DNA of 64,000 bases from the IMG/VR virus record IMGVR_UViG_3300025121_000282, positions 186,001 to 250,000 of that record. One strand, given 5' to 3'. A program made the translations under genes and the position numbers. A model generated the notes under the pieces. It worked only from the letters and a program-made list of their open reading frames with translations. It had not been told where the DNA came from and did no database searches. This document shows positions 14,914 through 29,546 of this stretch, piece by piece; position 1 is the stretch's first letter; the number at the start of each line of letters is the position of its first letter.

Positions 14914-14923
14914 AATTCTGTCC

Positions 14924-15109: not shown

Positions 15110-15114
15110 CTACA

Positions 15115-15818: not shown

Positions 15819-15820
15819 CA

Positions 15821-16244: not shown

Positions 16245-16568
16245 ATGAGCAAGCAATTCAGCAGTGGTATGCACGCGTGGTTCAGCTGGAAACAGGCCGA
16301 AGCTGCTGGCGTTCGGACGCTGAAGCGTCCTGATGGGACAACCTACCATCTGACCACAGTGACTGCCGCACTCGAACACGGCTGTGGTTGGGATGACATG
16401 CAATATCTCGGGACCATTGGTGAAGATGACACCGACGTGTGCTCTACCATGTCCTCACGAGAAAACTGCAACCATGTGAAAAACACGACACTTCTCCCGT
16501 TGGATGTGGGTTCCAAAGAGTTCTTTAAACTGGTTCTGGACTGCGAGTCCAACCAGAAAAACAAGTAA
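16245..16568 (+). CDS. family B hypothetical, copy 3
   Basis: Paralogy; motif at 16185. Confidence 0.85.
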   Translation: MSKQFSSGMHAWFSWKQAEAAGVRTLKRPDGTTYHLTTVTAALEHGCGWDDMQYLGTIGEDDTDVCSTMSSRENCNHVKNTTLLPLDVGSKEFFKLVLDCESNQKNK

Positions 16569-16623
16569 CATGACTGACTTGTCTCGGTGTCCACATGGAT
16601 AGTCAACAGAGGTAGTGCAACAG

Positions 16624-16935
16624 ATGGCCGACCTTCGACGTGAATTTACCACTGACCAGTACGAAGCCATGCGCCCAGATTTGGAAGAAGCAAGGGCTGC
16701 AGTTCTGGCTGCGCTTGCCCGACACCATGAACTGGGTCTGACCCAATGGGTCCGTCAAGATGCTGACTCTGTACCTGACCCTGCGGTAAAAGAGGCATTC
16801 AGCCTGTTGAATCAAGCGGCCAGACTCATCGACCGGGCTCAGTTCGAACTAGTGCTGCGCCTCCATACAACCGGAGCCATTGCACCCAAAAATGGCCCGA
16901 CAAGAGAGGCAACAAATGGCAACCATTCCCCGTGA
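16624..16935 (+). CDS. family D helical protein, copy 1
   Basis: Tandem paralog of 16916..17203 (LARHHELG...DPAVKEAF). Confidence 0.8.
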   Translation: MADLRREFTTDQYEAMRPDLEEARAAVLAALARHHELGLTQWVRQDADSVPDPAVKEAFSLLNQAARLIDRAQFELVLRLHTTGAIAPKNGPTREATNGNHSP

Positions 16936-17203
16936 TTTCACCATTGCACAATACGACGCCATGGCCCCCGACTTCGAGGCCGCTCGTGCAGGCGTTCTCG
17001 CCCTATTGGCTCGCCACCATGAACTTGGTCAGAGTCATTGGTTGGGCGGTGATAGTGACTCTGCACCCAACCCCGCGGTCAAAGAAGCATTTGACCTGTT
17101 GCATCAAGCGGTAAGGCTCATGGACCGTGCTCAGCACGAACTGGTCATGCACCTCTGCGCAAACGGGCACATTCCTTTTCAAACCGATCAGAAACCGGAT
17201 TGA
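16916..17203 (+). CDS. family D helical protein, copy 2
   Basis: Tandem paralog; stop inside TTGAC at 17200. Confidence 0.8.
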   Translation: MATIPRDFTIAQYDAMAPDFEAARAGVLALLARHHELGQSHWLGGDSDSAPNPAVKEAFDLLHQAVRLMDRAQHELVMHLCANGHIPFQTDQKPD

Positions 17204-17461
17204 CCGCGGACTGTTTCCGCTCTCTTCAAGGAGCGAGACGACCCAGGATAGTCTTGCATGGGTGACGAAAAACTACCATGCTTAGCTGGAGAAGTAGTGC
17301 ACATCCAGTGAAATGTCGGCACTAGTTGTGGGTTCGGGTGACGCCGATAAGGGGCTGCAGACCCCAAGCGCAAACCCTCCAAATGTGGTATCACTTGGCG
17401 TAAAAAGCCAAGCAATTACGGACAAAGCCACACAAGGCCTGTTGATGGTCCTAGACAGGCT

Positions 17462-17503
17462 ACAGCGCCCTCCCGGCCTCGCAAGTGGTTGAGAGGGCGC
17501 TGT
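17462..17503. terminator. 11-bp hairpin ACAGCGCCCTC/GAGGGCGCTGT, possible terminator
   Basis: Inverted repeat seen directly; weak U-tract. Confidence 0.4.
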
Positions 17504-17616
17504 CGTATTTGAAATCTATGAACAAATAAATTAACCAATCCTTTCGTGGGGTGAAGAACTGTACACAGTGGGCTCGGTGCCACACCCGAACCTTCTTTCC
17601 ACGACTGATGCACCTA

Positions 17617-17667
17617 CCCCCCCCCCCCCCCCCCCCCGCAATAATGGCTGCGGGCGAGGATAGATGT
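17617..17667. repeat. C21 tract plus hairpin element copy 2
   Basis: C21 at 17617-17637, then GCAATAATGGCTGCGGGCGAGGATAGATGT. Confidence 0.85.
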
Positions 17668-18504
17668 ACCCGAATTCGCCCGTTGCGGTCCGCCTGTCAC
17701 CAGTACGTGGCATAGCTGCCCCCTCCCATCTGTACTCCCACGTGAATGCGGCTCGCACTCGCAACCGCCTATCAAACCCACACACCACTCAATTGCGCGC
17801 CCGCATCAAGTACCCACAATTTCGCAAACAGCATACACGAACACGGATGTACACGGAATCGTGTATGCTGTGCTTTCGTGTATGCCAGAACGGATGTACT
17901 GCATCACGCTCTCGCCAACACATGCAAGTGCTCACGTGAACGTACGGGCTGTCACATGTGGGCCCACACACGAGTGTGCTCAGTGTTCAAGAAAATTTGT
18001 CCACAATATCTCGTTCTGATTTCTGAAATTTGTCCGCACTGTTCCCACTCTCCCAAGACAACCACCCCAGCTTTGGAAGCCCCTCAGTTTAGAACTATTC
18101 ACCCCCTGACACCCCTCGAACCAAAGCTATTTACACGTCCACACCTAGAAACTTTCAACTTCTGGTGTGTTTATTTATACCTATGGTTCTAAAAAGCGGT
18201 CTATTATAACAAGGTGTCACCCTTTGGCCAAACCAGAGCCACAGGTTTGGGCCTGCCTTGGGTTTGGGGCTTGGGGGGGGGGAGTTGTTTTTCACCCAGT
18301 AGGGAGTGCTAGATAACCCGTATTTCGGGAGTCTCAAACCGTTGACTACCCATTGACGGAGCCCTGTAGGGGTGAAATAACTCAGAGACGGAGATTTTCT
18401 TTCCCGCCTCGAAGAGACTCCCCCCCCCCGACTAAGGATTGACGAGGCGGGATGGGGAGTGAAGAATCCCAGAGACAATCAACCGACTGAACAGGAGATT
18501 CCCA

Positions 18505-18975
18505 ATGACCACCAAGTCCACCAAGTCCACCACCAAGTCCCCCCGCGCTCCCAAGATCGTCGTCGAGAAGCTGGACGCCCTGGGCTTCCCGATTCCCGCC
18601 GCTGCGCAGGAGCCGGTCATCGTCCCGGTCGAAGAGACCAATCCGGGCGCGACCGGGGTCGCGCCCGTCGTCGTCGTCAAGGCGGTCCGAGTCGTCCCCG
18701 AGGCCCCGCTCTGCCTCTGCGGGTGCCTGACCCAGACCAGCCACCACACCCGGACCTTCCGCCAGGGCCACGACGCCCGGCTGGTGGGGATGTTCCGCAA
18801 GGCGCCCGAGGGCCTCTCGGAGGCGCAGGTCGCGGCGGCCACCCAGATCATCAACCGGAAGCTCCAGAGCGCCGCCGCGAAGCTCCCGGCCGCCTCCAAG
18901 CCCATCCTGGAGGCCGCTCCTGCAGAGCAGAACGAGACCACCAGCGACGAGGCCGCTGCTTCCAACGTGGGCTGA
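18505..18975 (+). CDS. family A (CLCGC...GHDAR) protein, copy 2
   Basis: Paralogy; motif at 18439; AGGAG RBS. Confidence 0.88.
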   Translation: MTTKSTKSTTKSPRAPKIVVEKLDALGFPIPAAAQEPVIVPVEETNPGATGVAPVVVVKAVRVVPEAPLCLCGCLTQTSHHTRTFRQGHDARLVGMFRKAPEGLSEAQVAAATQIINRKLQSAAAKLPAASKPILEAAPAEQNETTSDEAAASNVG

Positions 18976-18982
18976 TCGGCCT

Positions 18983-19007
18983 TTCGCCTCCCGGACGGAG
19001 CGGTCAA
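18983..19007 (-). promoter_or_regulatory. antisense promoter motif TTGAC-N15-GCGAA pointing into 18505..18975
   Basis: Exact motif on the - strand just after the stop codon. Confidence 0.65.
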
Positions 19008-19066
19008 TCTTTGGGTGTCCGAGCCCGGGATTGACCGCCCAAGGACCGAGGTGAATCATCCCGAGA

Positions 19067-19231
19067 TTGGCTGTTCAGAAATCGGTTCGAAACATTGAGG
19101 ATTGGCAACCACCCGGTACGTTCCGGGAAAGGGGTCAATCTTTAGGAGGTGGTTTGTCAGGACCACCAACCCAGCACATAGGCTGACACCTTTTGTGATT
19201 GGGTGCTTCGGACCGGTTTCTGAACAGCCAA
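19067..19231 (+). ncRNA. candidate structured ncRNA 1 (25-bp closing helix, multibranch core)
   Basis: 19067-19091 pairs with 19207-19231, its only non-Watson-Crick pairs being two G-U; own motif at 19031; no ORF. Confidence 0.7.
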
Positions 19232-19269
19232 ATGAGGATTGACCGCTCTGGTCTCCGAGGCGAAGAGTT

Positions 19270-19340
19270 ATGTGGGGGTACCAATCGGCCCTAGAGGCCG
19301 GGGTCCACTGATACGTAATTCAGTATTGGTACCCCCACAT
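19270..19340 (+). ncRNA. candidate ncRNA 2 (three-way junction)
   Basis: Perfect 16-bp stem 19270-19285/19325-19340 enclosing CGGCC/GGCCG and ACTGA/TCAGT hairpins; motif at 19239. Confidence 0.65.
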
Positions 19341-19378
19341 TGTCAATTGACGAGAGTCACCCTCAGGTGAAGTGTCCT

Positions 19379-19553
19379 GGAAGAGAGGACAATCCAAGCC
19401 CCCGAGCCGTGTGGCCCGCCCGACTCCGCGGTAAGGCCTGCCACCCGCTTTGGGACTCAAGGGGCCTCTCTTCCCTTTTCAACTACACCCTCATTGGTCC
19501 TTTTCAAGAGACTGGTGGGGGCGCAGTCGTATTTGGGGTTCGAAAAGGACCAA
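19379..19553 (+). ncRNA. candidate ncRNA 3 (two stem domains)
   Basis: 10-bp stem 19379-19388/19465-19474 and 12-bp stem 19494-19505/19542-19553; motif at 19347. Confidence 0.6.
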
Positions 19554-19609
19554 AACCTGGATTGACCGATTTTGTTTCCATGCGAAGAAAGACAAGGAGG
19601 AACTCAAAA

Positions 19610-19843
19610 ATGTCCAGATTCAAACCCTCGGTTTCGCAGCTGATGGAGGTCCAGCACCGGGTGGACACTCAGAATCCGTCGCAAGTGGCACTCTTCTGCC
19701 GGGTGATTGGTGCCTCGATGCTTGCCAATGCTGCTGCCTCGATTCCCTCCGTCTGGAGAGCGGCTCGGGCCCAGTTGGCCATTGAGGCCGCCACGCTCAA
19801 TGTGGTCTTGGGCATCGACCTCGAAGTGGTTTGGTGCGATTGA
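19610..19843 (+). CDS. hypothetical protein
   Basis: AAGGAGG RBS; stop inside TTGAC at 19840. Confidence 0.8.
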   Translation: MSRFKPSVSQLMEVQHRVDTQNPSQVALFCRVIGASMLANAAASIPSVWRAARAQLAIEAATLNVVLGIDLEVVWCD

Positions 19844-19900
19844 CTGATTTCGTTTCCATGTGAAGAACGACACACAATCGACAGGGAGGGGCTAAAAAAG

Positions 19901-20173
19901 ATGGCACGCTTCTACGTTCAGGCGAGTGAGTACGAGTTGATTGCGTCCCTGGACGTGGTTGTGGCCGACACCTACGAGGCCATCCAACACTTTAACCGGC
20001 ACTTCAAGGGACGGGTTGGCGGGTGGAAAGACGTGAAGAGTTCCACCCACATCGTGATCAACCTTGACAACCCCAAAGAGCACTGGTTGGGAACCGACTC
20101 CTTCAAGCGCATCTGCACCGGGTGGCGCGAAGGTCGAGAATACTGGTCGGGTCCACACTCAATCGAGTATTAA
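19901..20173 (+). CDS. hypothetical protein
   Basis: GGGAGG RBS; stop inside TTAAC at 20170. Confidence 0.8.
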   Translation: MARFYVQASEYELIASLDVVVADTYEAIQHFNRHFKGRVGGWKDVKSSTHIVINLDNPKEHWLGTDSFKRICTGWREGREYWSGPHSIEY

Positions 20174-20236
20174 CCGGTTCCATCTTCAGCTGAAAGAGAC
20201 TACGAGACACCGAACCAACTGAAAGGGGGATTCCAA

Positions 20237-20689
20237 ATGCTCAGCGAAGACCGACTCGAAGTTCTCGACCTCTACGGCTTCGGATGGAATCGCTTCTTTC
20301 AGACGGTCCACGAGCCGGACCCGGAAGTGAAGCGGTCCATGATCGGCGATGTGCTTCTCATGTGGGAGTTCGACAAGACAGGAGCCGAGTACCACTGGTA
20401 CGACCTGTTCACACGCCTCCGCCGAGACGAGCATGCGATCATCCTGGAGCAGCTGTTGGTCTTCATCGACCAGGGGTTCGTCCTCGGACCGTTCGCAGAC
20501 GACACCATCACCATCAACCCGGAAAAGCAGGAAGAACTGATGCTTTTCGTGGGTATGTGGCCGGAGGGTTTCGAGGCACCCGAGGGTGTGGAAGTTCTTC
20601 GCCTGACGGAAGAGGCCAAGGACATTCTCGAAACAGAGGGCGGAGAAGAGTACCTCATCGAGCAGGCGGTCAAAGCACTCAAGGATTGA
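20237..20689 (+). CDS. acidic hypothetical protein
   Basis: Stop inside TTGAC at 20686. Confidence 0.8.
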   Translation: MLSEDRLEVLDLYGFGWNRFFQTVHEPDPEVKRSMIGDVLLMWEFDKTGAEYHWYDLFTRLRRDEHAIILEQLLVFIDQGFVLGPFADDTITINPEKQEELMLFVGMWPEGFEAPEGVEVLRLTEEAKDILETEGGEEYLIEQAVKALKD

Positions 20690-20759
20690 CCGGCCTCTCC
20701 TTCGGGTGAAGGAACTAAGAGAGCACTTTCGCTCTCCTTTTCCAGCCCAGGAGGTCATA

Positions 20760-21065
20760 ATGTCCCGCATCGACGCCGAATTCAAGTCCGTTGTCGCTTT
20801 CGCCAGTTACAAGCTCGACAACGACGACCCCACCTTCACGGGTGCCGATTTGCAAACCCTCAACCGGGTGACGCTGACATCGGTCCCGAACATCAAGCTC
20901 CAATTGCTCGAACTTGGCCTGACCCAGGCCATTCCCGAAAAGGCCTCCGTGGTCCGAGGGTTCACCGCGAACTCGCACGACCGGTGGGCCGGCAACCCCT
21001 GCGCGGGTGGGTCGGGTGGGTCGTCGATCCAGAAGTTCGCAGGGAATGCGGCCGGCTGGAATTGA
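20760..21065 (+). CDS. hypothetical protein
   Basis: AGGAGG RBS; stop inside TTGAC at 21062. Confidence 0.8.
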   Translation: MSRIDAEFKSVVAFASYKLDNDDPTFTGADLQTLNRVTLTSVPNIKLQLLELGLTQAIPEKASVVRGFTANSHDRWAGNPCAGGSGGSSIQKFAGNAAGWN

Positions 21066-21117
21066 CCTGAAGTCCTGTGGGGCGAAAGTCCACACACCAA
21101 ACCAGGGAGTTTTCAGT

Positions 21118-21387
21118 ATGTCGCGAGGCAACTCACAAGTCAATCGAAACTACGAATGCGCCACAAAGATGGCCGAGTGTGCTGATTTCGTGGTTGAGCA
21201 CTTGGGCTCACACGCACACTTTCAGGTGCGATGGGGGCAATTCTGGGCGACGGTCCGCCTCGACAGAAATGGGGATGTCTCGTGCGGGAGTTTCAATCGA
21301 AACTTTTCGCCTTGGGGCTCATCCGCCTCTGTTTTTTCCGAATTGCTGAGACAGTGGAAGTCCGAGGGTGAACCCAAGGCTGATTGA
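21118..21387 (+). CDS. hypothetical protein
   Basis: GGGAG RBS; stop inside TTGAC at 21384. Confidence 0.75.
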   Translation: MSRGNSQVNRNYECATKMAECADFVVEHLGSHAHFQVRWGQFWATVRLDRNGDVSCGSFNRNFSPWGSSASVFSELLRQWKSEGEPKAD

Positions 21388-21447
21388 CCCGTTTCCATTT
21401 CGGACGAAAAGACTACGAGACACCAGCCAACAAAGGAGTAGTTTCCA

Positions 21448-21726
21448 ATGTCCCCACCCTTTCTGATCGATTTTCAGGCCATGCAAGACCACCTGAACTC
21501 AAGGGAGATGGTACTCGCTGCCTGTTCCATCAATCGGGGTCAGCACGCAGGACAGCGGCTACGGCTCGTGGCGCGTTTCCTGGTGGAAGACCCCGGTGAT
21601 AAGGACACGATTTTCTACTATGTCACCCGCACGTTCCAGGGTGATAAGGTGTACGAGGATGGGCCAAGCCCACGTCTGGCTCTCTCGGTGTCGCTGTTCA
21701 ACAGCATCTCCCTGGGCGAAGGTTGA
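21448..21726 (+). CDS. hypothetical protein
   Basis: AAGGAG RBS; stop inside TTGAC at 21723. Confidence 0.8.
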   Translation: MSPPFLIDFQAMQDHLNSREMVLAACSINRGQHAGQRLRLVARFLVEDPGDKDTIFYYVTRTFQGDKVYEDGPSPRLALSVSLFNSISLGEG

Positions 21727-21777
21727 CCCGCCTCGTTTCCATGTGAAGACCAGCACACAATCAAGGAGGAAACAGTA

Positions 21778-22035
21778 ATGACTCTGGCCAACGACCCCCG
21801 CCGGTGGGGCGGGATTTGCAAGTGGGATGGAACTTCGGCTCCCACGGTGACCGTCCAACCCCGGCTCCTGGATCTCCAAGGGTACGACTCGAACGGTCAG
21901 TACTTCGGGCGCGGTCTCCCCCTCTACTGCGTCACAGACGAAGAGGGGGACATGAACTTCTTCGTTCGTGCGGAGGGCATGGACCACGCCCGAGAGTTGG
22001 TTCTGGAGCGGGTTCCCACCTGTCAGTTCGCCTAA
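21778..22035 (+). CDS. hypothetical protein (LDxxGYDxxGxYFGxG)
   Basis: AAGGAGG RBS; motif at 21723. Confidence 0.8.
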   Translation: MTLANDPRRWGGICKWDGTSAPTVTVQPRLLDLQGYDSNGQYFGRGLPLYCVTDEEGDMNFFVRAEGMDHARELVLERVPTCQFA

Positions 22036-22098
22036 GTGGGAATTGACTGAGGTCCGTTTCCACCTGAATTGTGACACACTGAGAAATGGAGACTGAAA

Positions 22099-22323
22099 GT
22101 GGCCAACGTTCCCTACAAGTTTCGTGGTCTTCCCTGCAACATCACGACCGACGACAAGCTCTGGTGCATCGTCGGTCGCTTCGTCAATGAACGGGGTTGC
22201 GGTGGGGGCGCCTTGGAGTGGTGCTACGATGAGCAGGACGCCTCGGCTGTTCTGGCTCAGATGGTTCAGGACAGCCAGTTTCGAAACCTGCAAGCCATCA
22301 CGTATAAGCAGTTCTGCGCTTAA
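22099..22323 (+). CDS. hypothetical protein
   Basis: GGAG RBS; stop inside TTAAC at 22320. Confidence 0.75.
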   Translation: MANVPYKFRGLPCNITTDDKLWCIVGRFVNERGCGGGALEWCYDEQDASAVLAQMVQDSQFRNLQAITYKQFCA

Positions 22324-22373
22324 CCCACGCCGTTTCCATGTGAACAGTCACGCACTGGAAAAGGAGACCGAAA

Positions 22374-22514
22374 ATGGTAAAGAATCTCATCATCGGTCTC
22401 CTGCTCGTTGCCTTCGTGGCACGGGCAAACCCAGAAAAGGTGGCTCATCTGAGCAAGATGGCCACGACTGGAGTCACCTACCTGGAGAAACAGGTCGGGT
22501 TCAAATTCTGGTGA
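22374..22514 (+). CDS. 46-aa membrane-anchored/secreted peptide
   Basis: AAGGAG RBS; MVKNLIIGLLLVAFVARA hydrophobic N-terminus. Confidence 0.65.
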   Translation: MVKNLIIGLLLVAFVARANPEKVAHLSKMATTGVTYLEKQVGFKFW

Positions 22515-22562
22515 ATTGACCGCACCACAATTCGGACGAAGAGTGTTGTAGGAGACACCCCC

Positions 22563-22868
22563 ATGTACAAGAGTTTGGCAGAGTTTCTAGCCTCAACGAA
22601 TTTGCTGGAGAGGTTGACCAACATCGACAGGGCCCTGAATGTAAACGGGGCCCTGTGCAACCACCATGACGGTGTGGTCTTCAAAATCAACTTCGGCCCC
22701 TATACGGCGAGTTGCATGTGGCTGGATACCGTGTCGGACAACACCTGGAATGTCCAACTCTCCTACCTGGATTCAGACCACAAATACCACCCGTTCGGTG
22801 GCAGCGTTTCAACCTCTGAGTTCAAGATCGTAAAGGGTGTAGCCGAGATCTGCGGACTCGGCAATTGA
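22563..22868 (+). CDS. hypothetical protein
   Basis: AGGAG RBS; stop inside TTGAC at 22865. Confidence 0.8.
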   Translation: MYKSLAEFLASTNLLERLTNIDRALNVNGALCNHHDGVVFKINFGPYTASCMWLDTVSDNTWNVQLSYLDSDHKYHPFGGSVSTSEFKIVKGVAEICGLGN

Positions 22869-23245
22869 CGGGGTCTTCTCCGGGTGAAGAGTCCCCGAGG
22901 CGCTTTTGCCTCCCTTGTCCTCTGGGGGTTTTAACCATGCCTTCTTCCGATCTCTCCTTTTCCTTTTCCGGCCGTCCCTACCGCGCCCGCCTTCTCTCCG
23001 AGCCCGGCAAGGGTGACGCGCTGGTCTTCGGTCTCAGCCTCAACCCGAAACTGGACAAGGTCTGGGTTCTGGTGCAACGTGACGGCGCGTGGGTGCGCCC
23101 CACGGGTGAAAAGCCCTCGGCTCTGGGGCGGGCCGCAGTCGCAGCGATCGGTTGATCGGCGTTTCCGATTGACGGGGTCTTCTCCGGGTGAAGAGTCCCC
23201 GAGGCGCTTTTGCCTCCCTTGTCCTCTGGGGGTTTTAACCATGCC
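22864..23245 (+). repeat. 78-bp exact direct repeat (22864-22941, 23168-23245) comprising promoter, leader and ATG
   Basis: Read directly base for base. Confidence 0.95.
22937..23155 (+). CDS. hypothetical protein (MPSSDLSF)
   Basis: ATG inside repeat copy 1. Confidence 0.7.
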   Translation: MPSSDLSFSFSGRPYRARLLSEPGKGDALVFGLSLNPKLDKVWVLVQRDGAWVRPTGEKPSALGRAAVAAIG

Positions 23246-23540
23246 CGCCGCTGCCGCCCTTGCCCTCGACACGTTCCAGGCCAACCACGCGAATGACGAC
23301 CTTTGGGACGTCATGACGTTTGCTGATATGGTGGAAAACTGGCACCTTTCGACCCCCGAAGAAGAGTGCTTCAAAGCGGCTCTGGAGTTGGAGGGGCTCG
23401 GCCTCCTCACCGTCAGTACCGGATTTCTGTGCTACTCGGTCGAACTGACGGGCCTTGGGCGAGAGGCCTCCCAGATCTTCCACCAGCGGTTTTTGGACCG
23501 CGTGAAGGCCCAGAACCCGGACTTCGATGGCGTATGGTAA
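23241..23540 (+). CDS. hypothetical protein (MPAAAALA)
   Basis: ATG inside repeat copy 2. Confidence 0.75.
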   Translation: MPAAAALALDTFQANHANDDLWDVMTFADMVENWHLSTPEEECFKAALELEGLGLLTVSTGFLCYSVELTGLGREASQIFHQRFLDRVKAQNPDFDGVW

Positions 23541-23592
23541 GGGATTGACTGAAATCTGTTTCCATGTGAATTGTGACAAGGAGGAACTCAAA

Positions 23593-23820
23593 ATGGAAAC
23601 AGAAATCCTGACCCAGTGGTTCAACGAGGAAAGCGGCAATCACTGGATCGTGGTGGAAGACGCCATTGGGAAGTTTCTTCACAAGGGAAAACGGGTGGCA
23701 CTGCTGGCGGTCAGCGGTGATGTGGACAACACCTTCGTACTGAAGTGGGTTGTCGACCCCTGCTGGACGACGGAAGAGGAAGAATCGGCACTGTCAGTGC
23801 TTGGAGTTGCAGCCCGCTGA
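23593..23820 (+). CDS. hypothetical protein
   Basis: GAGGA RBS; motif at 23545. Confidence 0.75.
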   Translation: METEILTQWFNEESGNHWIVVEDAIGKFLHKGKRVALLAVSGDVDNTFVLKWVVDPCWTTEEEESALSVLGVAAR

Positions 23821-23865
23821 ATCGATTCAGCGGGATTGACCGCAGTTTTTTCGTGTGAATTACAA

Positions 23866-24050
23866 TGTACCGGGGCGACCTCCGAAGGGCCACTTAGCTC
23901 TTAAACATGTGCCTACGCCCCAAAGTGCTATGCGGTAGGGTGCATGCAATAGTCGTCAATGGTGTCTGGCGTAAGTGTGCTGCGGGGTCGGGTCAATGTT
24001 CGACCGTAAGACCGTCTGAAGCACACAGACACCGTTCCTTTTAAAGCTGG
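23866..24050 (+). ncRNA. candidate structured ncRNA 4
   Basis: Motif at 23836 followed by no ORF; nested stems 23961-67/24027-33, 23975-81/24020-26, 23986-90/24001-05 and 23906-16/23935-46. Confidence 0.55.
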
Positions 24051-24051
24051 A

Positions 24052-24090
24052 CCCCCCCCCTGCAATAATGGCTGCGGGCGGGGATAGATG
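24052..24090. repeat. C9 tract plus hairpin element copy 3
   Basis: GCAATAATGGCTGCGGGCGGGATAGATGT at 24062-24090. Confidence 0.85.
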
Positions 24091-24318
24091 TGTCAAACGT
24101 GTGGACACCTGCTACGCCTGTCAACGCGTCCACGCTGCATCCGCACAACCCACTCAGACGTACCCCCACGGGAGACATTCGAGCCGCACAATCCATTGTA
24201 ACCCGTTTCCACATAATAGTAAGTTGTGGTGGGTGGCAGGTTGTCCGAGGCATTTGAAAACTCACTGTTGAATCTTCCACCTGAGATTGACCCGTTTCCA
24301 TCTCGGGTGAAAAACAAC

Positions 24319-24714
24319 ATGGAAACAACATGGACCAATGAAGACGCAGCCGAAGCAGGACGAGCCTACCAAGGAGCCAACGACCCGGATTGGCAGGCAC
24401 CTGACCTGGACTGGCGGTACGAACCTGCTTTTCCAGTTGAAAAACTCATCCCGCTGATGCCGAGTGGGTTCAACGGCTGGAATTCGTGGCTGCTGGACGA
24501 GCGGCAGTGGGACGAGTCTGGAGGTACCAGTCGATGGGGCGACGAATTCACCGAGTGGTGGAAGCAACAGTCCGAGGATGAGCCCGTGGTCCTCGTGGAA
24601 TCGCACGATGGGTCCAAAATCCTTGGGATCTGGGATGGGTGGCCCCGGTCTGCGGTTTCCATCACCTCAAGGTTGCCGACCCTACCTGCCTTTGTGGGTC
24701 GGGCCAGACAATGA
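24319..24714 (+). CDS. possible degenerate ParB/Srx-like domain protein; probably leaderless
   Basis: EPVVLVE...IWDGWPR resembles the ParB DGxHR motif with H replaced by P; ATG 8 nt after GTGAA. Confidence 0.6.
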   Translation: METTWTNEDAAEAGRAYQGANDPDWQAPDLDWRYEPAFPVEKLIPLMPSGFNGWNSWLLDERQWDESGGTSRWGDEFTEWWKQQSEDEPVVLVESHDGSKILGIWDGWPRSAVSITSRLPTLPAFVGRARQ

Positions 24715-24806
24715 TTCAGCCATAACTCCCTGGTGACAAGTTGCAATTGACCGAACTTTCGTTCAGGCGAAAGTTCTGGAGAGACAACCAACCACGAAGA
24801 TTCCAA

Positions 24807-25025
24807 ATGACCCTCCCCATCACGATTTTCGTTGTCACGACCGCCTCGTCCATTGACGAAAACACACCGAACCCGAAGGTGATGGTGGGACACCTCTCCG
24901 AAGGCGAAATCTGGAACCAGTTCACCGAGCTCCTGGGTGGGTCTGACTGCGAACTCATCCAGGAGAGCGAAACCCGCTGGACCGGCGTCGTGGGAGACCG
25001 GACGGTCTTCGCCTTCCACGCCTGA
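24807..25025 (+). CDS. hypothetical protein
   Basis: Motif at 24747. Confidence 0.7.
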   Translation: MTLPITIFVVTTASSIDENTPNPKVMVGHLSEGEIWNQFTELLGGSDCELIQESETRWTGVVGDRTVFAFHA

Positions 25026-25085
25026 ACGATTGACGGGCTTTGTTTCTGTCTGACGAACACCACACCAACAAGGGAGACTTCGAAA

Positions 25086-25304
25086 ATGACTCGCGAAACC
25101 GTCACCAAGTGCATTGCCTTCATTTACATCTGCCTTTGCACCATTGGCCTCGGCGCCATGGCGGGCCTGCAGGAGCGGCAGTTCAGCGGGGCATGGTGGG
25201 TGCTCAGTCTCCTGATGGCCGCGGTCGTGGCGGTCATGGGCCTCATGGCCACCGTCTGCGAGCGCAAGCACCTGGGTTGGCGAATCTGGGTCGAAGAGTG
25301 CTGA
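25086..25304 (+). CDS. two-TM membrane protein
   Basis: GGGAG RBS; two hydrophobic segments. Confidence 0.75.
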   Translation: MTRETVTKCIAFIYICLCTIGLGAMAGLQERQFSGAWWVLSLLMAAVVAVMGLMATVCERKHLGWRIWVEEC

Positions 25305-25364
25305 TTGACGGAGCCTCCTGAGGGGCGAAGAGTCCCAGACCAACAACCAAGAGGAGACCGCACG

Positions 25365-25709
25365 ATGCCATTCCCCACCCCCCAGATCGAAGCTGCCACT
25401 CCCACCCCCTGCTCCGCCTTTCGGGCGTGGGCTGTCTACGCCGACTTCGACGGCAATGCGCCTGACACCAAGGACCTCGTCCTTTGCGCCTCCGAACCGC
25501 TGGCGCAAGCGGCGGCAGAGTTCCTCGCGTGGGCTGCCGACGAGCAGCAGGCGAACTGTTACAATGGCGCTGACTGCGACCCTGATGCCGATGGTGTTGC
25601 CGTCCCATCGGTCGACGAAGCGAATCGCGCGAGGAATTTCGTGGTCCGCGAGACCGTGGCCTCTCGGGTCTGCACGACCTGGGACGAGGTGTTGGCCGAC
25701 CTTCGCTAA
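25365..25709 (+). CDS. hypothetical protein
   Basis: GAGGAG RBS; motif at 25305. Confidence 0.75.
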   Translation: MPFPTPQIEAATPTPCSAFRAWAVYADFDGNAPDTKDLVLCASEPLAQAAAEFLAWAADEQQANCYNGADCDPDADGVAVPSVDEANRARNFVVRETVASRVCTTWDEVLADLR

Positions 25710-25716
25710 CCTGACC

Positions 25717-25741
25717 TTCGTCCTCGACTGAGAGTCGTCAA
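25717..25741 (-). promoter_or_regulatory. antisense promoter motif TTGAC-N15-ACGAA pointing into 25365..25709
   Basis: Exact motif on the - strand just after the stop codon. Confidence 0.65.
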
Positions 25742-25999
25742 GCTGTGCCCAGTCTGCCGAGAGGTGGCCTGGGCACAGCCGTACCTGAGTTCTGAGAGAT
25801 TCGTCCTCACAGGCATCCGGCTCTTCGGGCTGATTGGCCGATTGACGGAGGGTCGCAGCGGGTGAAAAAGGATAAGAGGACGAGATAGTTTCGTTTCGGT
25901 CCTCCTGCCCCGGTCCCCCGACTAAGGATTGACGGACCCGGGGCCGAGACGAAGAATCCCAGAGACAGCGAATCAACCCAAGACGAAGGAGATCATCCC

Positions 26000-26506
26000 A
26001 TGGCCACCAAGTCCACCAAGAGCACCACCAAGTCCCCCCGCGCCACCCGCAAGCAGGCCGAGGTCCTCGACGCCCTCGGTTTCCCGGTCCCCGCCATCAT
26101 GGAGGCCGCTCCCGAGCCCGTCGTGGCGCCCGAGCCCGAAATCCCGGTGGTCGTGGCCGTCAAGGCCGAAAAGGCGGTCCGAGTCGTCCCCGAGGCCCCG
26201 CTCTGCCTCTGCGGCTGCCTCGTGCAGACGAGCAGCCACCTGCGGACCTTCCGCCAGGGCCATGACGCCCGGCTGGTGGGCTTCCTGGCCGCCAACGAGC
26301 GGGCGGTCGCGAAGCAGAAGGAGGCCCCTCACAACCTCTCGGAGGCGCAGATCACCGCCGCCTGCCAGATCCGGAACCGCAAGGCGGAGGCCGCCGCCGC
26401 GAAGCTCCCTTCGACCTCGTCGAAGCCCGTGCTGGAGGCCGCTCCTGCGGAGCAGAACGAAGCCGAGCAGAGCACGGACGAGCAGGACGCCGCGAACGCC
26501 GGCTGA
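26000..26506 (+). CDS. family A (CLCGC...GHDAR) protein, copy 3
   Basis: Paralogy; motif at 25929; AAGGAG RBS. Confidence 0.88.
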   Translation: MATKSTKSTTKSPRATRKQAEVLDALGFPVPAIMEAAPEPVVAPEPEIPVVVAVKAEKAVRVVPEAPLCLCGCLVQTSSHLRTFRQGHDARLVGFLAANERAVAKQKEAPHNLSEAQITAACQIRNRKAEAAAAKLPSTSSKPVLEAAPAEQNEAEQSTDEQDAANAG

Positions 26507-26513
26507 TCGGGCC

Positions 26514-26538
26514 TTCGTCTGACCGACCCGCCCGTCAA
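26514..26538 (-). promoter_or_regulatory. antisense promoter motif TTGAC-N15-ACGAA pointing into 26000..26506
   Basis: Exact motif on the - strand just after the stop codon. Confidence 0.65.
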
Positions 26539-26629
26539 GCTTTCCGAGCCGATTGACCGCAGCCTCTGAGGGGCGAAGGAATCCCGAGGGCAGTTTCGCC
26601 CCCCCCCCACCAACAGAGGACCATTTACA

Positions 26630-26962
26630 ATGATCAGCGCTTTTCGGGACATGGTTGCTGAATTCGAACGGACCAAGGCTGCTTTCGAAGCCGCACAACG
26701 GAAGTTGGAGCAGGGACGGCGGCAGTGTGCCCATCTGTGGGGACCCACCCAATACGATCCCATCAGGACCAAGGGATACGAAAAGCAGGACCTCATGGGT
26801 CATTTCACGGTGAGCCAGGACGGTCACGTCAACGCTCCCACGGTGTACATCCCTCCGACCGAAACCCCGCAGTGGGTCCGCACCTGCGAACACTGTGGAC
26901 TGACCGAAACCACCCGGCAGACAACAGAGCAGAAGAGCTACACGCCGAAGTTCGGGCAGTAG
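26630..26962 (+). CDS. hypothetical protein (coiled coil plus CxH...CxxC Zn site)
   Basis: GAGG RBS; motif at 26553. Confidence 0.75.
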   Translation: MISAFRDMVAEFERTKAAFEAAQRKLEQGRRQCAHLWGPTQYDPIRTKGYEKQDLMGHFTVSQDGHVNAPTVYIPPTETPQWVRTCEHCGLTETTRQTTEQKSYTPKFGQ

Positions 26963-26999
26963 GGGGATTGACCGAATCGCACGATGGGTGAAAGAACAT

Positions 27000-27260
27000 A
27001 TGAGCACACCACAAGAAATCCAGGCCCAGAAAACCCTCATTCAGCGGCTCGATGCGGCCGGAATCCTGGACAGTGAGAAGGACTGCGACTTCAAGCTTCG
27101 GGACGAGTTGTTCTTCCGGGTGGGCAACACGATCTTCGGGTATGAGGACCCCACAATCACGGAGGTTCCCTCAACCACGATGGGTGACGATGTCAGCACC
27201 TACGAGGTGAACTACGTCAGAATGCTCGCCGTGTGGGTTGACCCGGTCAAGATCCTGTAG
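27000..27260 (+). CDS. hypothetical protein, probably leaderless
   Basis: ATG 8 nt after GTGAA of the motif at 26968, no SD. Confidence 0.7.
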   Translation: MSTPQEIQAQKTLIQRLDAAGILDSEKDCDFKLRDELFFRVGNTIFGYEDPTITEVPSTTMGDDVSTYEVNYVRMLAVWVDPVKIL

Positions 27261-27278
27261 AAAAATGGGTCAAGTAAA

Positions 27279-27578
27279 ATGAAATGGTGGCTCTCATTCT
27301 GCGATGCAACCCTACCAAGGGGCTCTCAATTCTTGGGTGCTTGCATCGTGGAAGGTGAAAGCATGATCGAGGCGGTAAAGAGTGCACATCGCCTCGGATG
27401 CAACCCTGGTGGAGAAGTCCAGGGCTGTCCTGTTCAAGAAGATCTGGTCATTGCCGATAGGTGGCTTTCACGCTTGTTATCGCGTGAAGAGTGTACACAG
27501 GTGGATGAAGAAGTGTACAAGGCCAAGTTGAAATTGACCGAATCGCACGATCGGTTGAACAAAGGTGCGGGACACTAA
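27279..27578 (+). CDS. hypothetical protein (MKWWLSFCD...GCNPGGEV)
   Basis: 99 aa ORF with typical codon usage. Confidence 0.7.
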   Translation: MKWWLSFCDATLPRGSQFLGACIVEGESMIEAVKSAHRLGCNPGGEVQGCPVQEDLVIADRWLSRLLSREECTQVDEEVYKAKLKLTESHDRLNKGAGH

Positions 27579-28128
27579 CTCAGTTAGCAAAGAATGCCTA
27601 CATTGCAAGGTTTCGTTTGTCCCACCGTACAGAAATAGACAAAAGAAATTTTGTTGTGTAGAGCACTCTCGTCTGTGGCAGAGCCAAACCCTGACTAACC
27701 AGAACACCGTCTCACGCGACGGGAAGTGTCGAAAGTGTGCTATCACCATAGACACCAACTTTCCGGGCAAAAATAGAGGTGGGCGTAGTAGACTATGTGC
27801 CAAGTGTTTCAGCAACTACACCAGTGAGCGTTATCTTTCCAGAAAACTGGCTTTAATTGAGTTTTTGGGCGGAAAATGTCATGACTATGGGCAGCAGTAC
27901 CATTATGCTGCCATGCAGTTTCATCACACGGACCCCAACAGCAAAGAGTTTGACTGGAGCCGTTTAAGACGACAGTCTCTCGCCACTGTGCTAAATGAAA
28001 TTAGCAAGTGTGCTTTGCTCTGCAATAATTGCCATGCAATAAGGCACTGTCAATCCCAGATAAGTGACGAGTCTCTAAGAATGAAAAATAACTTCCTCGC
28101 TGACTTAAGATCGGCGCACGCCTTTTAA
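27565..28128 (+). CDS. HNH homing endonuclease-like protein
   Basis: GGKC...QFHHTDPNSKEF...KCALLCNNCHAIRH, N-terminal Zn/DNA-binding Cys motifs; AT-richer than neighbours. Confidence 0.85.
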   Translation: MRDTNSVSKECLHCKVSFVPPYRNRQKKFCCVEHSRLWQSQTLTNQNTVSRDGKCRKCAITIDTNFPGKNRGGRSRLCAKCFSNYTSERYLSRKLALIEFLGGKCHDYGQQYHYAAMQFHHTDPNSKEFDWSRLRRQSLATVLNEISKCALLCNNCHAIRHCQSQISDESLRMKNNFLADLRSAHAF

Positions 28129-28316
28129 GCGTTGAGGTTCTGGGTTTCTACCCCCAGGTTGAAACCACCACCCGCAAGAATCGATGCGCCCCGAAAAGAA
28201 AGAATCGCACGATGAGTCCCCTGGTGATTGTCCATCACGGGTTATCGTGCGATTGACCCGTCCAACCCGAGATTGAAGTAATCCATGGCACACACATCCC
28301 ACAAAAGGTCCTTGTA

Positions 28317-28541
28317 ATGACAACCCCGGCAGGGCCCATGGCGACAGAGTACGTGGCACACGCTGAAACTTGTCCGCGATGTGAGACTGTAGACCGTGGA
28401 GTTGTGTCTGATTCCCGATTAAGACCAGGGTCCAGATGTCCAGTAGGTAAAATACTGGTCAAAGCAGCAGTGAGGGAAGATGTCCGTTTAGGCAGGTGCC
28501 ATCCCAACGGGCAAAGCAAGAGTTTTGTGTCCCCCAAGTAG
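28317..28541 (+). CDS. small Cys-containing hypothetical protein
   Basis: CPRC...CPVG; motif at 28253. Confidence 0.45.
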   Translation: MTTPAGPMATEYVAHAETCPRCETVDRGVVSDSRLRPGSRCPVGKILVKAAVREDVRLGRCHPNGQSKSFVSPK

Positions 28542-28921
28542 TTCTACTATCCGAAGTCGTGGTCAATCACAGACCATAATCGTGCGATTCCAGAAGGTTG
28601 TAATTGACGAATCGCATGATGGGGTGAAAAATAGTGGGAGTCCGAGAAATTACAACAGGGCAAAGGTGGATAATTGACAGAGCACGGGGAAGGTGGAAAT
28701 ACCCCACGGAAGGAAACGGGGGAGTCCGAAATATACCCCATTTCCCGAAAGGTCGGGGGCCGTCAAATGTATATATCGATATATATTTCCAGAGGTATAT
28801 ATCATCTTGCGCGTGCTCCAATGTACCTGGACGAATATTCGGATACAAACGTTTGATAACTTGTTAGTGCTGTTTTGGTCGCACCTACGTTGTTTCGTTG
28901 TTCCATTAAAAACAGGAGTGT

Positions 28922-29149
28922 GTGACCATGCTCGTCTACCTACTCATCAATGAAAAAGCCACTACCTACCTAGACAAGTGGCGGCTATTCGCTTCTAAAC
29001 AGGAGTGCTTAGCCGCTGCCCGAAAGCTGGGTTATGGTTCGTCCCCGTTCGGAGAATTCGGTTCTCTGAGTGACGAGCCTGGAAAAATTACCCAGGAGAT
29101 GGGTTGTAACCGACTGGCTTGGATATCACCATGGTTCCTGTCATACTAG
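28922..29149 (+). CDS. hypothetical protein
   Basis: AGGAG RBS. Confidence 0.6.
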   Translation: MTMLVYLLINEKATTYLDKWRLFASKQECLAAARKLGYGSSPFGEFGSLSDEPGKITQEMGCNRLAWISPWFLSY

Positions 29150-29305
29150 ACATACCATAGTGAATATACTGTATTGCAGTATGCACCCGGGTTGGTTGTT
29201 ATCTCCTCAAGGTTGTAGTACTATTTTGGTTTTGGAAATTATTTATATCTGGGCTGCAGTAGGTACAAATATTCGGTCAGGATAGAAATTGGAGATTGTA
29301 ATTAG

Positions 29306-29533: not shown

Positions 29534-29546
29534 GGAGCGTAATGCC

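What the first reader, a model, noticed from the sequence alone, without database searches (positions are those of the whole stretch)
22864..23245. Identical 78-bp expression module fused at the ATG to two unrelated ORFs
The repeat runs from the A before TTGAC through YGAA, a leader hairpin (GAGGC-GCTTTT-GCCTC) and a GGGGG SD to ATGCC, then diverges into unrelated proteins. The first ORF ends in a broken older joint (TTGATCGGCGTTTCCG) right before copy 2. This is the clearest snapshot of promoter-plus-RBS capture of a new ORF. It also predicts precise loss of a 304-bp unit by recombination.
Basis: seen in the sequence. Interest (0 to 1): 0.7.

Follow-up and report, generated by a model that had tools for sequence, protein, structure and literature searches.

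The report
Duplicated promoter cassette flanking a losable phage gene
In a 315-kb groundwater jumbo phage, two identical 78-base promoter-leader-start modules bracket a small real gene, and natural phage populations carry both this form and a form in which recombination between the two modules has cleanly removed the 304-base unit.

Summary
An exact 78-nt direct repeat (22864-22941 and 23168-23245, spacing 304) runs from one base before a TTGAC box through a leader and a GGGGG Shine-Dalgarno to ATGCC. It then continues into two unrelated ORFs: A (72 aa) and B (99 aa).

It is not a misassembly. k=127 and k=141 contigs from several samples span it, and k=31 graphs show the repeat node at about twice the depth.

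The module belongs to an array of about 45 co-oriented "TTGAC-N14-16-GTGAA, leader, SD, ATG" cassettes in front of small ORFs. The upstream gene's TGA stop often lies inside the TTGAC.

The stub TTGATCGGCGTTTCCG before copy 2 is the 5' half of a canonical cassette promoter (18 such signatures against 0.22 expected; this is the only one cut off at an identifiable joint).

The predicted 304-bp loss exists in nature. Three contigs from at least two samples join 22863 directly to 23168. They sit on two different SNP backgrounds, each of which also occurs with ORF A.

The phage encodes a RecA/UvsX-like recombinase and no site-specific recombinase.

ORF A is a real, confidently folding protein family of unknown function.

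The closest known system is the PeSL cassettes of T4-type phages. This locus works like them but lacks their stem-loop signature and lies in a non-Gp23 jumbo phage.

The parts
2249..30385 (+). Array of about 37 co-oriented promoter-like cassettes (TTGAC-N14-16-GTGAA, 21-87-nt leader, SD, ATG) in front of small ORFs. It continues upstream of the window to genome position ~150 kb, about 45 cassettes in all. This block has higher GC (52-59%).
   Evidence: 41 matches in the window against 6.6 expected, 38 of them on the + strand and 37 within 2249-30385; the motif is confined to genome 150-217 kb; sequences; median 34.5 nt to the start codon, median ORF 98 aa. GC profile.
22563..22868 (+). Upstream 101-aa early ORF. 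Its TGA stop (22866-22868) lies inside the TTGAC box of module copy 1, which is the normal way cassettes abut here.
   Evidence: the same stop-in-TTGAC arrangement at 25 of 55 motif sites. Called as a gene in all assemblies.
22864..22941 (+). Module copy 1 (78 nt): TTGACG 22865-22870, GTGAA 22884-22888 (putative -10 AAGAGT 22887-22892), hairpin 22897-22912, GGGGG SD 22924-22928, ATGCC 22937-22941.
22937..23155 (+). ORF A, 72 aa. A real small protein: five beta-strands plus a C-terminal helix. It belongs to a conserved family of 54-83-aa proteins that also occurs as repeats in large proteins. Function unknown. Dispensable in nature.
   Evidence: 15 homologues, best E 2.5e-13; alignment A1; pLDDT 89, pTM 0.74; no fold match; coding-like GC by codon position.
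23152..23167 (+). Stub TTGATCGGCGTTTCCG: the 5' half of a canonical GTTTCC-type cassette promoter, cut off at the left edge of module copy 2. It contains ORF A's TGA stop.
   Evidence: 18 TTGAY-N0-9-GTTTCC against 0.22 expected; this one is truncated right at the left edge of copy 2 (one other unit, at 17199, also lacks GTGAA).
23168..23245 (+). Module copy 2 (78 nt), 100% identical to copy 1.
23241..23540 (+). ORF B, 99 aa. Lineage-specific ORFan. A weak structural lead to a winged-helix (MarR/PadR-like) fold. Retained in both alleles.
   Evidence: only self among 5.8 billion proteins. Atlas structure neighbours, model pLDDT 0.52. AF2 single-sequence pLDDT 49, unusable.
22864..23167 (+). The 304-bp unit (module + ORF A body + stub) that is missing in the natural single-module allele. 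Because of the 78-nt identity, the break can lie anywhere from 22864/23168 to 22941/23245.
   Evidence: an X9 contig joins 22863 to 23168, with 78 nt fitting both sides and depth 0 over ORF A. L005 and L006. L030.
23545..23820 (+). Next canonical cassette (TTGACTGAAATCTGTTTCCATGTGAA, SD, ATG 23593) and its 75-aa ORF. It shows what an intact GTTTCC-type promoter looks like.

Best explanation
The window lies in a complete 315-kb jumbo phage from groundwater. About 68 kb of the genome is an array of small genes, each with its own compact expression cassette: a sigma-70-like -35 box (TTGAC), a conserved GTGAA 14-16 nt later, a short leader, a Shine-Dalgarno and the ATG. The previous gene's stop often lies inside the TTGAC.

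The 78-nt repeat is one such cassette present twice, in front of two unrelated genes: ORF A, a real conserved small protein, and ORF B, an ORFan.

Copy 2 sits on a secondary joint that destroyed a canonical cassette promoter, whose 5' half survives as the stub. So at some point a promoter-to-ATG module and an ORF were newly joined here.

Because the two copies are identical direct repeats, general homologous recombination between them removes exactly one module plus ORF A (304 bp). The phage has its own RecA/UvsX-like enzyme. ORF B keeps an unchanged promoter, leader and start. Natural populations contain both forms.

Shown:
- the repeat;
- the two-copy and single-copy alleles in independent assemblies and on different SNP backgrounds;
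- the truncated promoter stub;
- the cassette family;
- ORF A being a real protein family.

Inferred:
- that the motif is an active (probably early, host-sigma-70-read) promoter;
- that the polymorphism arose by deletion rather than insertion;
- that RecA-type recombination is the agent.
For: Repeat and uniqueness.

Cassette family: 41 motif matches against 6.6 expected in the window, nearly all on the + strand. Confined to genome 150-217 kb. Each is followed by SD + ATG of a small ORF, and the upstream stop lies inside TTGAC at 25 of 55 sites.

Not a misassembly:
- In X1, X3 and X7 the 78-nt node has about twice the depth (41 vs 20-25; 211 vs 128-147; 11.3 vs 6.7), and a 286-nt ORF A node is at single depth.
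- MEGAHIT k=127 and k=141 contigs L007, L021, L023, L024, L026 and L028, plus JGI and ggKbase-style scaffolds, carry ORF A - module - ORF B.

Single-module allele:
- An X9 contig skips exactly 304 nt, with depth 0 over ORF A at ~10x.
- L005 and L006 are 100% identical to the window outside the 304 bp.
- L030 is a third contig from another ENA assembly.

Backgrounds:
- L030 carries 19962C/20251T, as does the ORF-A-bearing L012.
- L005 carries T/C there, as the window does.
- X9 has 24928G (haplotype H2), as do the two-copy contigs L001 and L024.
- So the two-copy form is on all three backgrounds and the loss is on two.

In the +-10 kb compared across 9 assemblies, the only cassette-sized indel lies at the only long exact repeat.

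Ectopic recombination is active in this population: mosaic tracts between the paralogues at 18.7 and 26.2 kb.

Recombination machinery: RecA family at 167 bits; no tyrosine or serine recombinase, with controls ringing.

Stub. ORF A is real.
Against: - No transcript data, so promoter activity and the start site are unproven. A standard TTGACA/TATAAT scan does not pick up the family because its -10 region is atypical.
- A sub-threshold sigma-70 region 4 hit elsewhere in the phage leaves room for a phage-encoded factor.
- Polarity (loss or gain) rests on parsimony over a few SNPs in a recombining population. No outgroup phage was found.
- Logan contigs drop rare variants, so within-sample allele frequencies are unknown.
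- L005 and L006 may come from the same sample.
- The origin of the duplication is not resolved: either the module was copied over ORF B's old promoter, or ORF A arrived as a cassette.
Confidence: 0.78

Rival explanations
1. The polymorphism is a gain, not a loss. The single-module form (101-aa gene - module - ORF B) is ancestral, and a 304-bp cassette (ORF A + promoter stub + module), perhaps a mini-circle excised elsewhere, integrated by homologous recombination into the resident module. This is the reverse reaction proposed for PeSL mini-circles.
For: - The reaction is formally reversible (Arbiol et al. 2010, PMC2839356).
- The stub shows ORF A once sat in front of a different, canonical promoter.
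- ORF A belongs to a family spread over unrelated metagenomic contigs.
- The two alleles are otherwise isogenic, so the SNPs give little time depth.
Against: - The two-copy form is on all three SNP backgrounds and the single-module form on two. Gain would need repeated identical insertions or extra recombination.
- No other source of ORF A at more than 60% identity exists among 1.8 billion representatives or 5.8 billion clusters.
- No contig shows ORF A in any other context.
Confidence: 0.15
2. The repeat is an assembly artefact: a single module was wrongly duplicated, or two strains were stitched together.
For: The window comes from a short-read metagenome assembly, and the repeat (78 nt) is longer than common k-mers. 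k=31 graphs do break at it.
Against: - k=127 and k=141 contigs from different samples and pipelines contain both joints, 101-aa gene - module - ORF A and ORF A - stub - module - ORF B.
- The repeat node has about twice the depth and the ORF A node single depth in three samples.
Confidence: 0.01
3. The module is the recombination site of a dedicated cassette system (integron-like attC/attI, or a small mobile element) and moves by a site-specific recombinase or transposase, not by general homology.
For: - The repeat boundaries coincide almost exactly with the functional boundaries (one base before TTGAC; two bases after ATG).
- Arbiol et al. themselves compared PeSL + ORFan cassettes with integrons.
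Against: - No tyrosine or serine recombinase in the complete genome, with controls ringing.
- Only two copies and no partial copies elsewhere.
- No terminal inverted repeats.
- The deletion joint is indistinguishable from simple homologous exchange (78 nt fit both sides).
Confidence: 0.04
4. The TTGAC...GTGAA motif is not a promoter. It is another kind of punctuation, such as a binding site for a phage regulator or for packaging or replication, or an RNA processing site. Under this reading the 78-nt unit is not an 'expression module'.
For: - The -10 region (GTGAA-gaaT) departs from TATAAT, and the standard scan does not find the family.
- GTTTCCAT in the spacer of about 17 units looks like a separate protein-binding word.
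- There are no RNA data.
Against: - A perfect -35 TTGAC(C).
- 16-17 nt from it lies an A-rich hexamer ending in T (AAGAAT, AATTAT, AAGAGT).
- Strict co-orientation with the genes.
- A fixed 21-87-nt distance to SD + ATG.
- One unit per small gene.

This is the geometry of sigma-70-type promoters, and of the early-promoter arrays of T4-type phages.
Confidence: 0.1

Closest known systems
PeSL (promoter-early stem-loop) regulatory cassettes of T4-type phages (Arbiol et al. 2010, PMC2839356; Comeau et al. 2014, PMC4122927)
   Same: - A composite intergenic motif running from the upstream gene's stop, through a sigma-70-like promoter, to the SD and ATG of a small ORFan.
- Dozens of copies clustered in a plastic region of non-essential genes.
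- Closely related genomes differ by the presence or absence of single ORFans bounded by two motifs.
- The loss leaves neighbouring expression intact.
- No dedicated recombinase; the phage's general recombination system is invoked.
   Different: - The host phage is an uncultivated 315-kb groundwater jumbo phage with no Gp23-type capsid match.
- The -10 region is GTGAA-gaaT rather than the E. coli consensus.
- The stem-loop/terminator component is not enriched (mean z -0.36 against -0.16 for controls; no terminators).
- The upstream stop lies inside the -35 box, not in an AT-rich tract.
- The recombining pair here is 78 nt and 100% identical through ATG+2, whereas PeSLs are merely similar.
- Mini-circles were not tested.
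Deletion between short direct repeats by phage or host homologous recombination (T4 needs less than 50 bp of homology; Singer et al. 1982 and Mosig, as cited in PMC2839356)
   Same: Precise loss of one repeat plus the intervening DNA. A RecA/UvsX-type enzyme is encoded by the phage.
   Different: Here the repeat is a complete expression module, so the product is a functional promoter-ORF fusion rather than a scar. The alleles are seen segregating in natural populations.
Integron gene cassettes
   Same: Small single-gene units that can be gained or lost as cassettes. A circular intermediate is conceivable.
   Different: - Each unit here carries its own promoter.
- There is no integrase.
- There is no attC-like imperfect inverted repeat.
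Morons and mosaic boundaries of lambdoid phages (my own recollection of Hendrix, Juhala and colleagues; no paper was read here)
   Same: Autonomously expressed extra genes with their own promoter, inserted between resident genes, with a novel joint at the gene boundary.
   Different: Morons are usually flanked by a promoter and a terminator and arise by illegitimate recombination. Here the flanks are identical modules that permit homologous excision.

Membership tests
PeSL cassettes (Arbiol et al. 2010) | Sigma-70-like early promoter (-35 and -10) in intergenic position | tested here: inconclusive
   A perfect -35 TTGAC, 16-17-nt spacing to an A-rich hexamer ending in T, with a strong strand and position bias. 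However, the -10 is atypical, the standard scan misses the family, and there are no activity data.
PeSL cassettes (Arbiol et al. 2010) | Stable stem-loop (often GGGG...CCCC) within or next to the promoter, acting as a terminator or attenuator | tested here: not met
   Across 55 units the mean folding z is -0.36 against -0.16 for random segments; 5 of 55 units have z below -1.5, against 10 of 55 controls. The module itself has a GGGG...CCCC pairing, but z is only -1.2. No intrinsic terminators were found at the cassettes in 20-26 kb.
PeSL cassettes (Arbiol et al. 2010) | The composite motif spans the upstream stop codon, SD and start codon of a downstream ORFan | tested here: met
   The upstream stop is the TGA of TTGAC at 25 of 55 sites. 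At 30 of 55 sites (strict filter), SD + ATG of an ORF of at least 40 aa follows 21-87 nt after the motif. Neighbouring ORFs have no Pfam or PHROG family.
PeSL cassettes (Arbiol et al. 2010) | Motifs clustered in hyperplastic regions of non-essential small genes | tested here: met
   The motif is confined to genome 150-217 kb. Median ORF is 98 aa. ORF A is absent from natural variants.
PeSL cassettes (Arbiol et al. 2010) | Indels between close relatives are bounded by two motifs (recombination between them) | tested here: met
   The 304-bp presence/absence polymorphism is bounded by the two modules, in otherwise 99.9-100% identical contigs.
PeSL cassettes (Arbiol et al. 2010) | Mini-circles formed by exchange between flanking motifs | not testable with these tools
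   This needs raw reads or inverse PCR. The one contig that reads ORF A tail - module - ORF A head (X14) is explained by a low-coverage de Bruijn walk through the two-copy genome, so it is not evidence.
PeSL cassettes (Arbiol et al. 2010) | Host genome is a T4-type myovirus | tested here: inconclusive
   No PF07068 (Gp23) match, but the control genomes did not ring either. The phage has RIIA, baseplate-wedge-like proteins, a large terminase and DnaB. No close relative was found in the phage or IMG/VR collections.
Integron cassette system | Tyrosine-recombinase integrase and attC/attI sites | tested here: not met
   No PF00589 or PF00239 match in a genome rated complete, with controls ringing in 14 and 12 of 14 genomes. 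No inverted-repeat site at the unit ends.
Tandem gene duplication | The duplicated units are homologous over their whole length | tested here: not met
   Identity is 100% for 78 nt and then none. ORF A and ORF B are unrelated in protein and DNA, and their predicted secondary structures differ: all-beta plus one helix against mainly helical.

The most novel reading that the evidence does not exclude
The cassette array may be an integrase-free gene-shuffling platform. Under this reading, promoter-to-ATG modules serve as portable homology arms, so that single early genes such as ORF A cycle in and out of jumbo-phage genomes. They might travel as ~300-bp promoter-carrying mini-circles. The recurrent presence/absence of ORF A on several haplotypes would then reflect fluctuating selection on an accessory host-takeover or anti-defence gene, rather than neutral decay.
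Probability: 0.15. Interest if true: 0.75.

Novelty: new variant of a known kind. Interest (0 to 1): 0.5.

Why it matters
How phages gain and lose their many small ORFan genes is largely inferred from comparing isolates. Here both states of one such event are caught segregating in wild populations of an uncultivated jumbo phage. The recombination substrate is visible: an exact promoter-to-ATG repeat. So is the scar of the earlier joining event: a half promoter. This extends the PeSL idea of regulatory cassettes doubling as recombination sites beyond T4-type phages, and to a cassette type that lacks the stem-loop. It also gives a concrete, PCR-sized system (304 bp) for measuring excision, circle formation and re-integration, and a defined dispensable early gene (ORF A, a confidently folding new family) whose function can be tested.

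Tried and rejected
1. Circle or tandem junction. An X14 contig (157 nt) reads 23144-23167, then the module, then 22942-22996. I considered it a circle or triplication joint and rejected that. At 2.7x depth the branches 'upstream gene to module' and 'module to ORF B' are simply unsampled, so a k=31 walk through the ordinary two-copy genome gives this contig.

2. PeSL stem-loop. Folding of the module and of all 55 units against shuffles and random controls shows no enrichment.

3. Known RNA family in the leader: no Rfam hit at E up to 0.1 in 20-27 kb.

4. Outgroup relatives:
- An exact 40-nt piece of the module in IMG/VR: none.
- blastn of 6 kb against phage genomes: none.
- RIIA-based search of IMG/VR: none.
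- ORF A and ORF B in 5.8 billion clusters: only self.
- Contexts of remote ORF A homologues (L031, L032) belong to unrelated GC-rich arrays and cannot polarise the event.

5. Paralogues of ORF A or ORF B, or of their DNA, elsewhere in the genome: none.

6. Function of ORF A by fold: no PDB or BFVD match at E up to 0.001.

7. ORF B structure: the single-sequence AF2 model is unusable (pLDDT 49). Only a weak winged-helix lead from the Atlas.

8. Microhomology at the unit's outer junctions (GGCA|ATTGAC against TTCCG|ATTGAC; ATGCC|TTCT against ATGCC|CGCC): none seen by eye, so the original joining mechanism stays open.

9. Phage-encoded sigma factor or single-subunit RNAP that could read the motif: only a sub-threshold region-4 hit. 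The PF00940 control did not ring, so its absence is not informative.

Full report
**1. The observation**

The repeat finder reports one family of two exact 78-nt copies, at 22864-22941 and 23168-23245, 304 nt apart.
- In the whole 314,886-bp genome (the window is genome 186001-250000) the sequence occurs only at these two places.
- No diverged partial copy exists at up to 4 substitutions for any third of the module.
- A self-comparison of the 70-kb early region shows this is by far the longest exact repeat there (the next exact match is 24 nt). The other repeats of 28-40 nt are 92-96% identical, and the two longer ones are 84-89% coding paralogues.

Reading the sequence gives these features:

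| Feature | Coordinates |
|---|---|
| TTGACG | 22865-22870 |
| GTGAA | 22884-22888 |
| GAGGC-GCTTTT-GCCTC | 22897-22912 |
| GGGGG | 22924-22928 |
| ATG (copy 1 / copy 2) | 22937 / 23241 |

Identity stops after ATGCC.

ORF A (22937-23155, 72 aa) and ORF B (23241-23540, 99 aa) are unrelated in protein and DNA. The one exception is the leader hairpin, which is present as sequence but is no more stable than shuffled controls.

**2. What genome this is**

The contig is an IMG/VR virus record that CheckV rates complete. It is recovered from several groundwater metagenomes.

It encodes:
- baseplate proteins;
- a large terminase, a DnaB helicase, RIIA, and a PurZ-like and a Mom-like enzyme;
- a chaperonin, an adenylosuccinate lyase and an M16 peptidase.

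So it is a jumbo phage. No Gp23-type capsid was found (control silent). No close relative was found in the phage or IMG/VR collections.

**3. The module is one member of a cassette family**

- TTGAC-N14-20-TGAA occurs 41 times in the window against 6.6 expected. 38 of the matches are on the + strand, and 37 of those fall between 2.2 and 30.4 kb.
- Genome-wide, the motif is confined to 150-217 kb.
- Each unit is followed by a short leader, an SD and the ATG of a small ORF: median 34.5 nt to the start, median ORF 98 aa.
- At 25 of 55 motif sites, the upstream open frame ends in the TGA contained in TTGAC itself.
- The 101-aa gene before copy 1 does exactly this (stop 22866-22868).

The geometry is sigma-70-like: TTGACC, 16-17 nt, then an A-rich hexamer ending in T (AAGAAT, AATTAT, AAGAGT). 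A strict TTGACA/TATAAT scan does not detect the family, and no RNA data could be laid. Promoter function is therefore an inference from anatomy.

The block has 52-59% GC against 42-47% for the rest of the window.

**4. The 'broken older joint'**

About 17 cassettes carry GTTTCC(AT) in the spacer. TTGAY-N0-9-GTTTCC occurs 18 times in the early region against 0.22 in shuffles.
- At least 16 of the other 17 are followed by the (G)TGAA/CGAA half of an intact unit. One further unit, at 17199, also lacks it (see section 10).
- The eighteenth is TTGATCGGCGTTTCCG at 23152-23167. It is cut off right where copy 2 begins, and it contains ORF A's TGA stop in the position where cassette genes normally end.

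So ORF A once abutted a canonical promoter in the normal way, and the left edge of copy 2 is a secondary joint.

It does not say which of two events happened:
- the module was copied over ORF B's old promoter and start; or
- ORF A plus stub arrived as a cassette next to a module that already drove ORF B.

I saw no microhomology at the outer junctions.

**5. Not a misassembly**

In k=31 Logan graphs of three samples (X1, X3, X7):
- the upstream contig ends 30 nt into the repeat;
- the repeat is a separate 78-nt node;
- a 286-nt node carries ORF A.

| Run | 78-nt repeat node depth | Flanking / ORF A node depth |
|---|---|---|
| X1 | 41 | 20-25 |
| X3 | 211 | 128-147 |
| X7 | 11.3 | 6.7 |

MEGAHIT contigs built with k=127 or k=141, longer than the repeat, contain 101-aa gene - module - ORF A - stub - module - ORF B. 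So do JGI assemblies and scaffolds from other pipelines. These are L001-L004, L007, L011, L014, L021 and L023-L029.

**6. The predicted deletion exists**

- Run X9 has a 4854-nt contig that passes from 22863 directly to 23168 ('skips 304', with 78 nt fitting both sides). Depth is zero over ORF A at ~10x.
- That same Logan contig (L005) and a JGI contig from another assembly (L006) are 100% identical to the window on both sides of the missing unit.
- A third contig, L030, from a SPAdes assembly in another ENA record, has the same joint.
- ORF B was indexed on more contigs than ORF A (18 against 14).

**7. Loss or gain?**

The SNP backgrounds are:

| Contig or run | Allele | 19962 / 20251 | Downstream haplotype |
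|---|---|---|---|
| L030 | single-module | C / T | H1-like (24928A, 25326C, 25337A, 25394T) |
| L012 | carries ORF A | C / T | not covered |
| L005 | single-module | T / C | ends at 24060 |
| X9 (run of L005) | single-module | - | sole base at 24928 is G (H2) |
| L001, L024 | two-copy | C at 20251 (L001) | H2 |
| window | two-copy | T / C | H1 |

Sources.

The two-copy form therefore occurs on all three backgrounds and the single-module form on two. The simplest reading is recurrent precise deletion from a two-copy ancestor. The alternative is that recombination has moved the alleles among backgrounds.

Further support:
- Across the +-10 kb compared in nine assemblies, this is the only cassette-sized indel, and it sits at the only long exact repeat.
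- Ectopic exchange is visibly active: contigs L024, L025 and L030 carry tracts copied from the paralogue at 26.2 kb into the 18.7-kb copy.
- The phage encodes a RecA/UvsX-family protein (167 bits) and no tyrosine or serine recombinase.

Gain by integration of a 304-bp circle is the formal reverse reaction. It cannot be excluded, and I give it about 0.15.

**8. The genes**

ORF A is real.
- An exhaustive HMMER search finds 15 homologues. The best are 54-83-aa proteins at 44-60% identity, and the domain also occurs as repeats in proteins of 535-2052 aa.
- The alignment shows a conserved SFxFxGRxY...DALVFGLGLNPKLDKVWV...LTPLAxAAxAA pattern beginning 4-7 residues after the Met. So the module-ORF A joint preserves a natural N-terminus.
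- AlphaFold2 with this alignment gives pLDDT 89 and pTM 0.74: five strands plus a C-terminal helix.
- There is no significant PDB or viral fold match.

ORF B has no homologue. It has only a weak winged-helix lead, and its AF2 model is unusable.

Both ORFs show the same codon-position GC pattern as their neighbours.

**9. Comparison with what is known**

The closest described system is the PeSL cassettes of T4-type phages.
- PeSLs are composite motifs running from the upstream stop, through a sigma-70-like early promoter and a stem-loop, to the SD and ATG of an ORFan.
- There are about 50 per genome, concentrated in hyperplastic regions.
- Recombination between them deletes, inserts or replaces ORFans between near-identical phages and yields mini-circles (PMC2839356; PMC4122927).

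This locus shares the composite layout, the clustering, the ORFan association and the motif-bounded indel between near-identical genomes.

It differs in five ways:
- the stem-loop/terminator component is not enriched;
- the -10 region is atypical;
- the stop lies inside the -35 box;
- the phage is not a recognisable Gp23-type T4-like phage;
- the recombining pair is an exact 78-nt duplicate reaching two bases past the ATG.

I therefore describe it as working like a PeSL system without filing it as a PeSL.

Integron-like and tandem-duplication readings fail their defining tests.

**10. What remains open**

- Promoter activity.
- Within-sample allele ratios.
- Circles.
- The polarity and mechanism of the original joining.
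- The functions of ORF A and ORF B.

One more unit with a 5' half only (TTGACC...GTTTCCG at 17199-17219, with no GTGAA) hints that such scars may not be unique. It was not followed up.

Noticed in passing
window 17617-17637, ~18419, 24052-24060, ~26598: Poly-C tracts whose length differs among otherwise near-identical assemblies. For example, the window has 21 C at 17617, while L021, L023, L024 and L027 have 8-11. The tract at 24052 varies by 1-3 C, and the single-module contigs L005 and L006 end there. This could be homopolymer sequencing or assembly noise, or it could be real slippage-prone tracts.
   Followed up: partly
window 17628-17667 and 24052-24091; promoter-like unit 23836-23859: A 40-nt repeat (95% identical) directly follows two of the poly-C tracts. 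Both copies lie in ORF-free stretches. The unit at 23836 is followed by about 390 nt with no called gene. This is a candidate non-coding transcript. There is no Rfam hit over the 24-kb copy (the only one lying in the 20-27 kb searched).
   Followed up: partly
window 18723-18897 against 26171-26400 (contigs L024, L025, L030): Mosaic tracts. Some assemblies carry short (10-nt) or long (~110-nt, including a 30-nt insertion) stretches of the 26.2-kb paralogue inside the 18.7-kb paralogue. This indicates gene conversion between diverged paralogous early genes, each of which is preceded by tandem promoter units.
   Followed up: yes
window 17199-17219: A second unit has the TTGACC-N8-GTTTCCG 5' half but no GTGAA half and no ORF behind it. 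It may be another scar of cassette rearrangement.
   Followed up: no
genome 286256-288679 (-), 284678-286213 (-); window 43168-44436 (+): A PurZ-like enzyme (phrog_1211, annotated as 2-aminooxy adenylosuccinate synthetase, in an 807-aa frame), a Mom-like/HNH protein and an adenylosuccinate lyase. Together they hint at modified bases, possibly 2-aminoadenine, in this phage's DNA.
   Followed up: no
genome 24999-28199 (+) and 45576-48407 (+): The large terminase (1066 aa) and the DnaB helicase (943 aa) are oversized and carry extra segments that hit other PHROGs (phrog_9666, phrog_17415). This suggests inteins or inserted domains.
   Followed up: no
window ~28000: A sharp GC step, from 52-59% in the cassette array to 42-47% in the rest of the phage. 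The array may have a different origin or be under different constraints.
   Followed up: no
window 5298-5385: A tRNA-Leu(CAG) lies inside the cassette array.
   Followed up: no
L031:553-975: The closest ORF A homologue, on an unrelated metagenome contig, is itself flanked by near-identical leader/SD modules (GGGTGGAGGTGAC-GATCATG) in front of successive small ORFs. Module sharing between neighbouring small genes may be common in such arrays.
   Followed up: no
genome 19005-19151 (+): A sub-threshold sigma-70 region 4 match (23.3 bits against a 24.1 cut-off) in a 236-aa frame. This could be a phage-encoded sigma-like factor.
   Followed up: no
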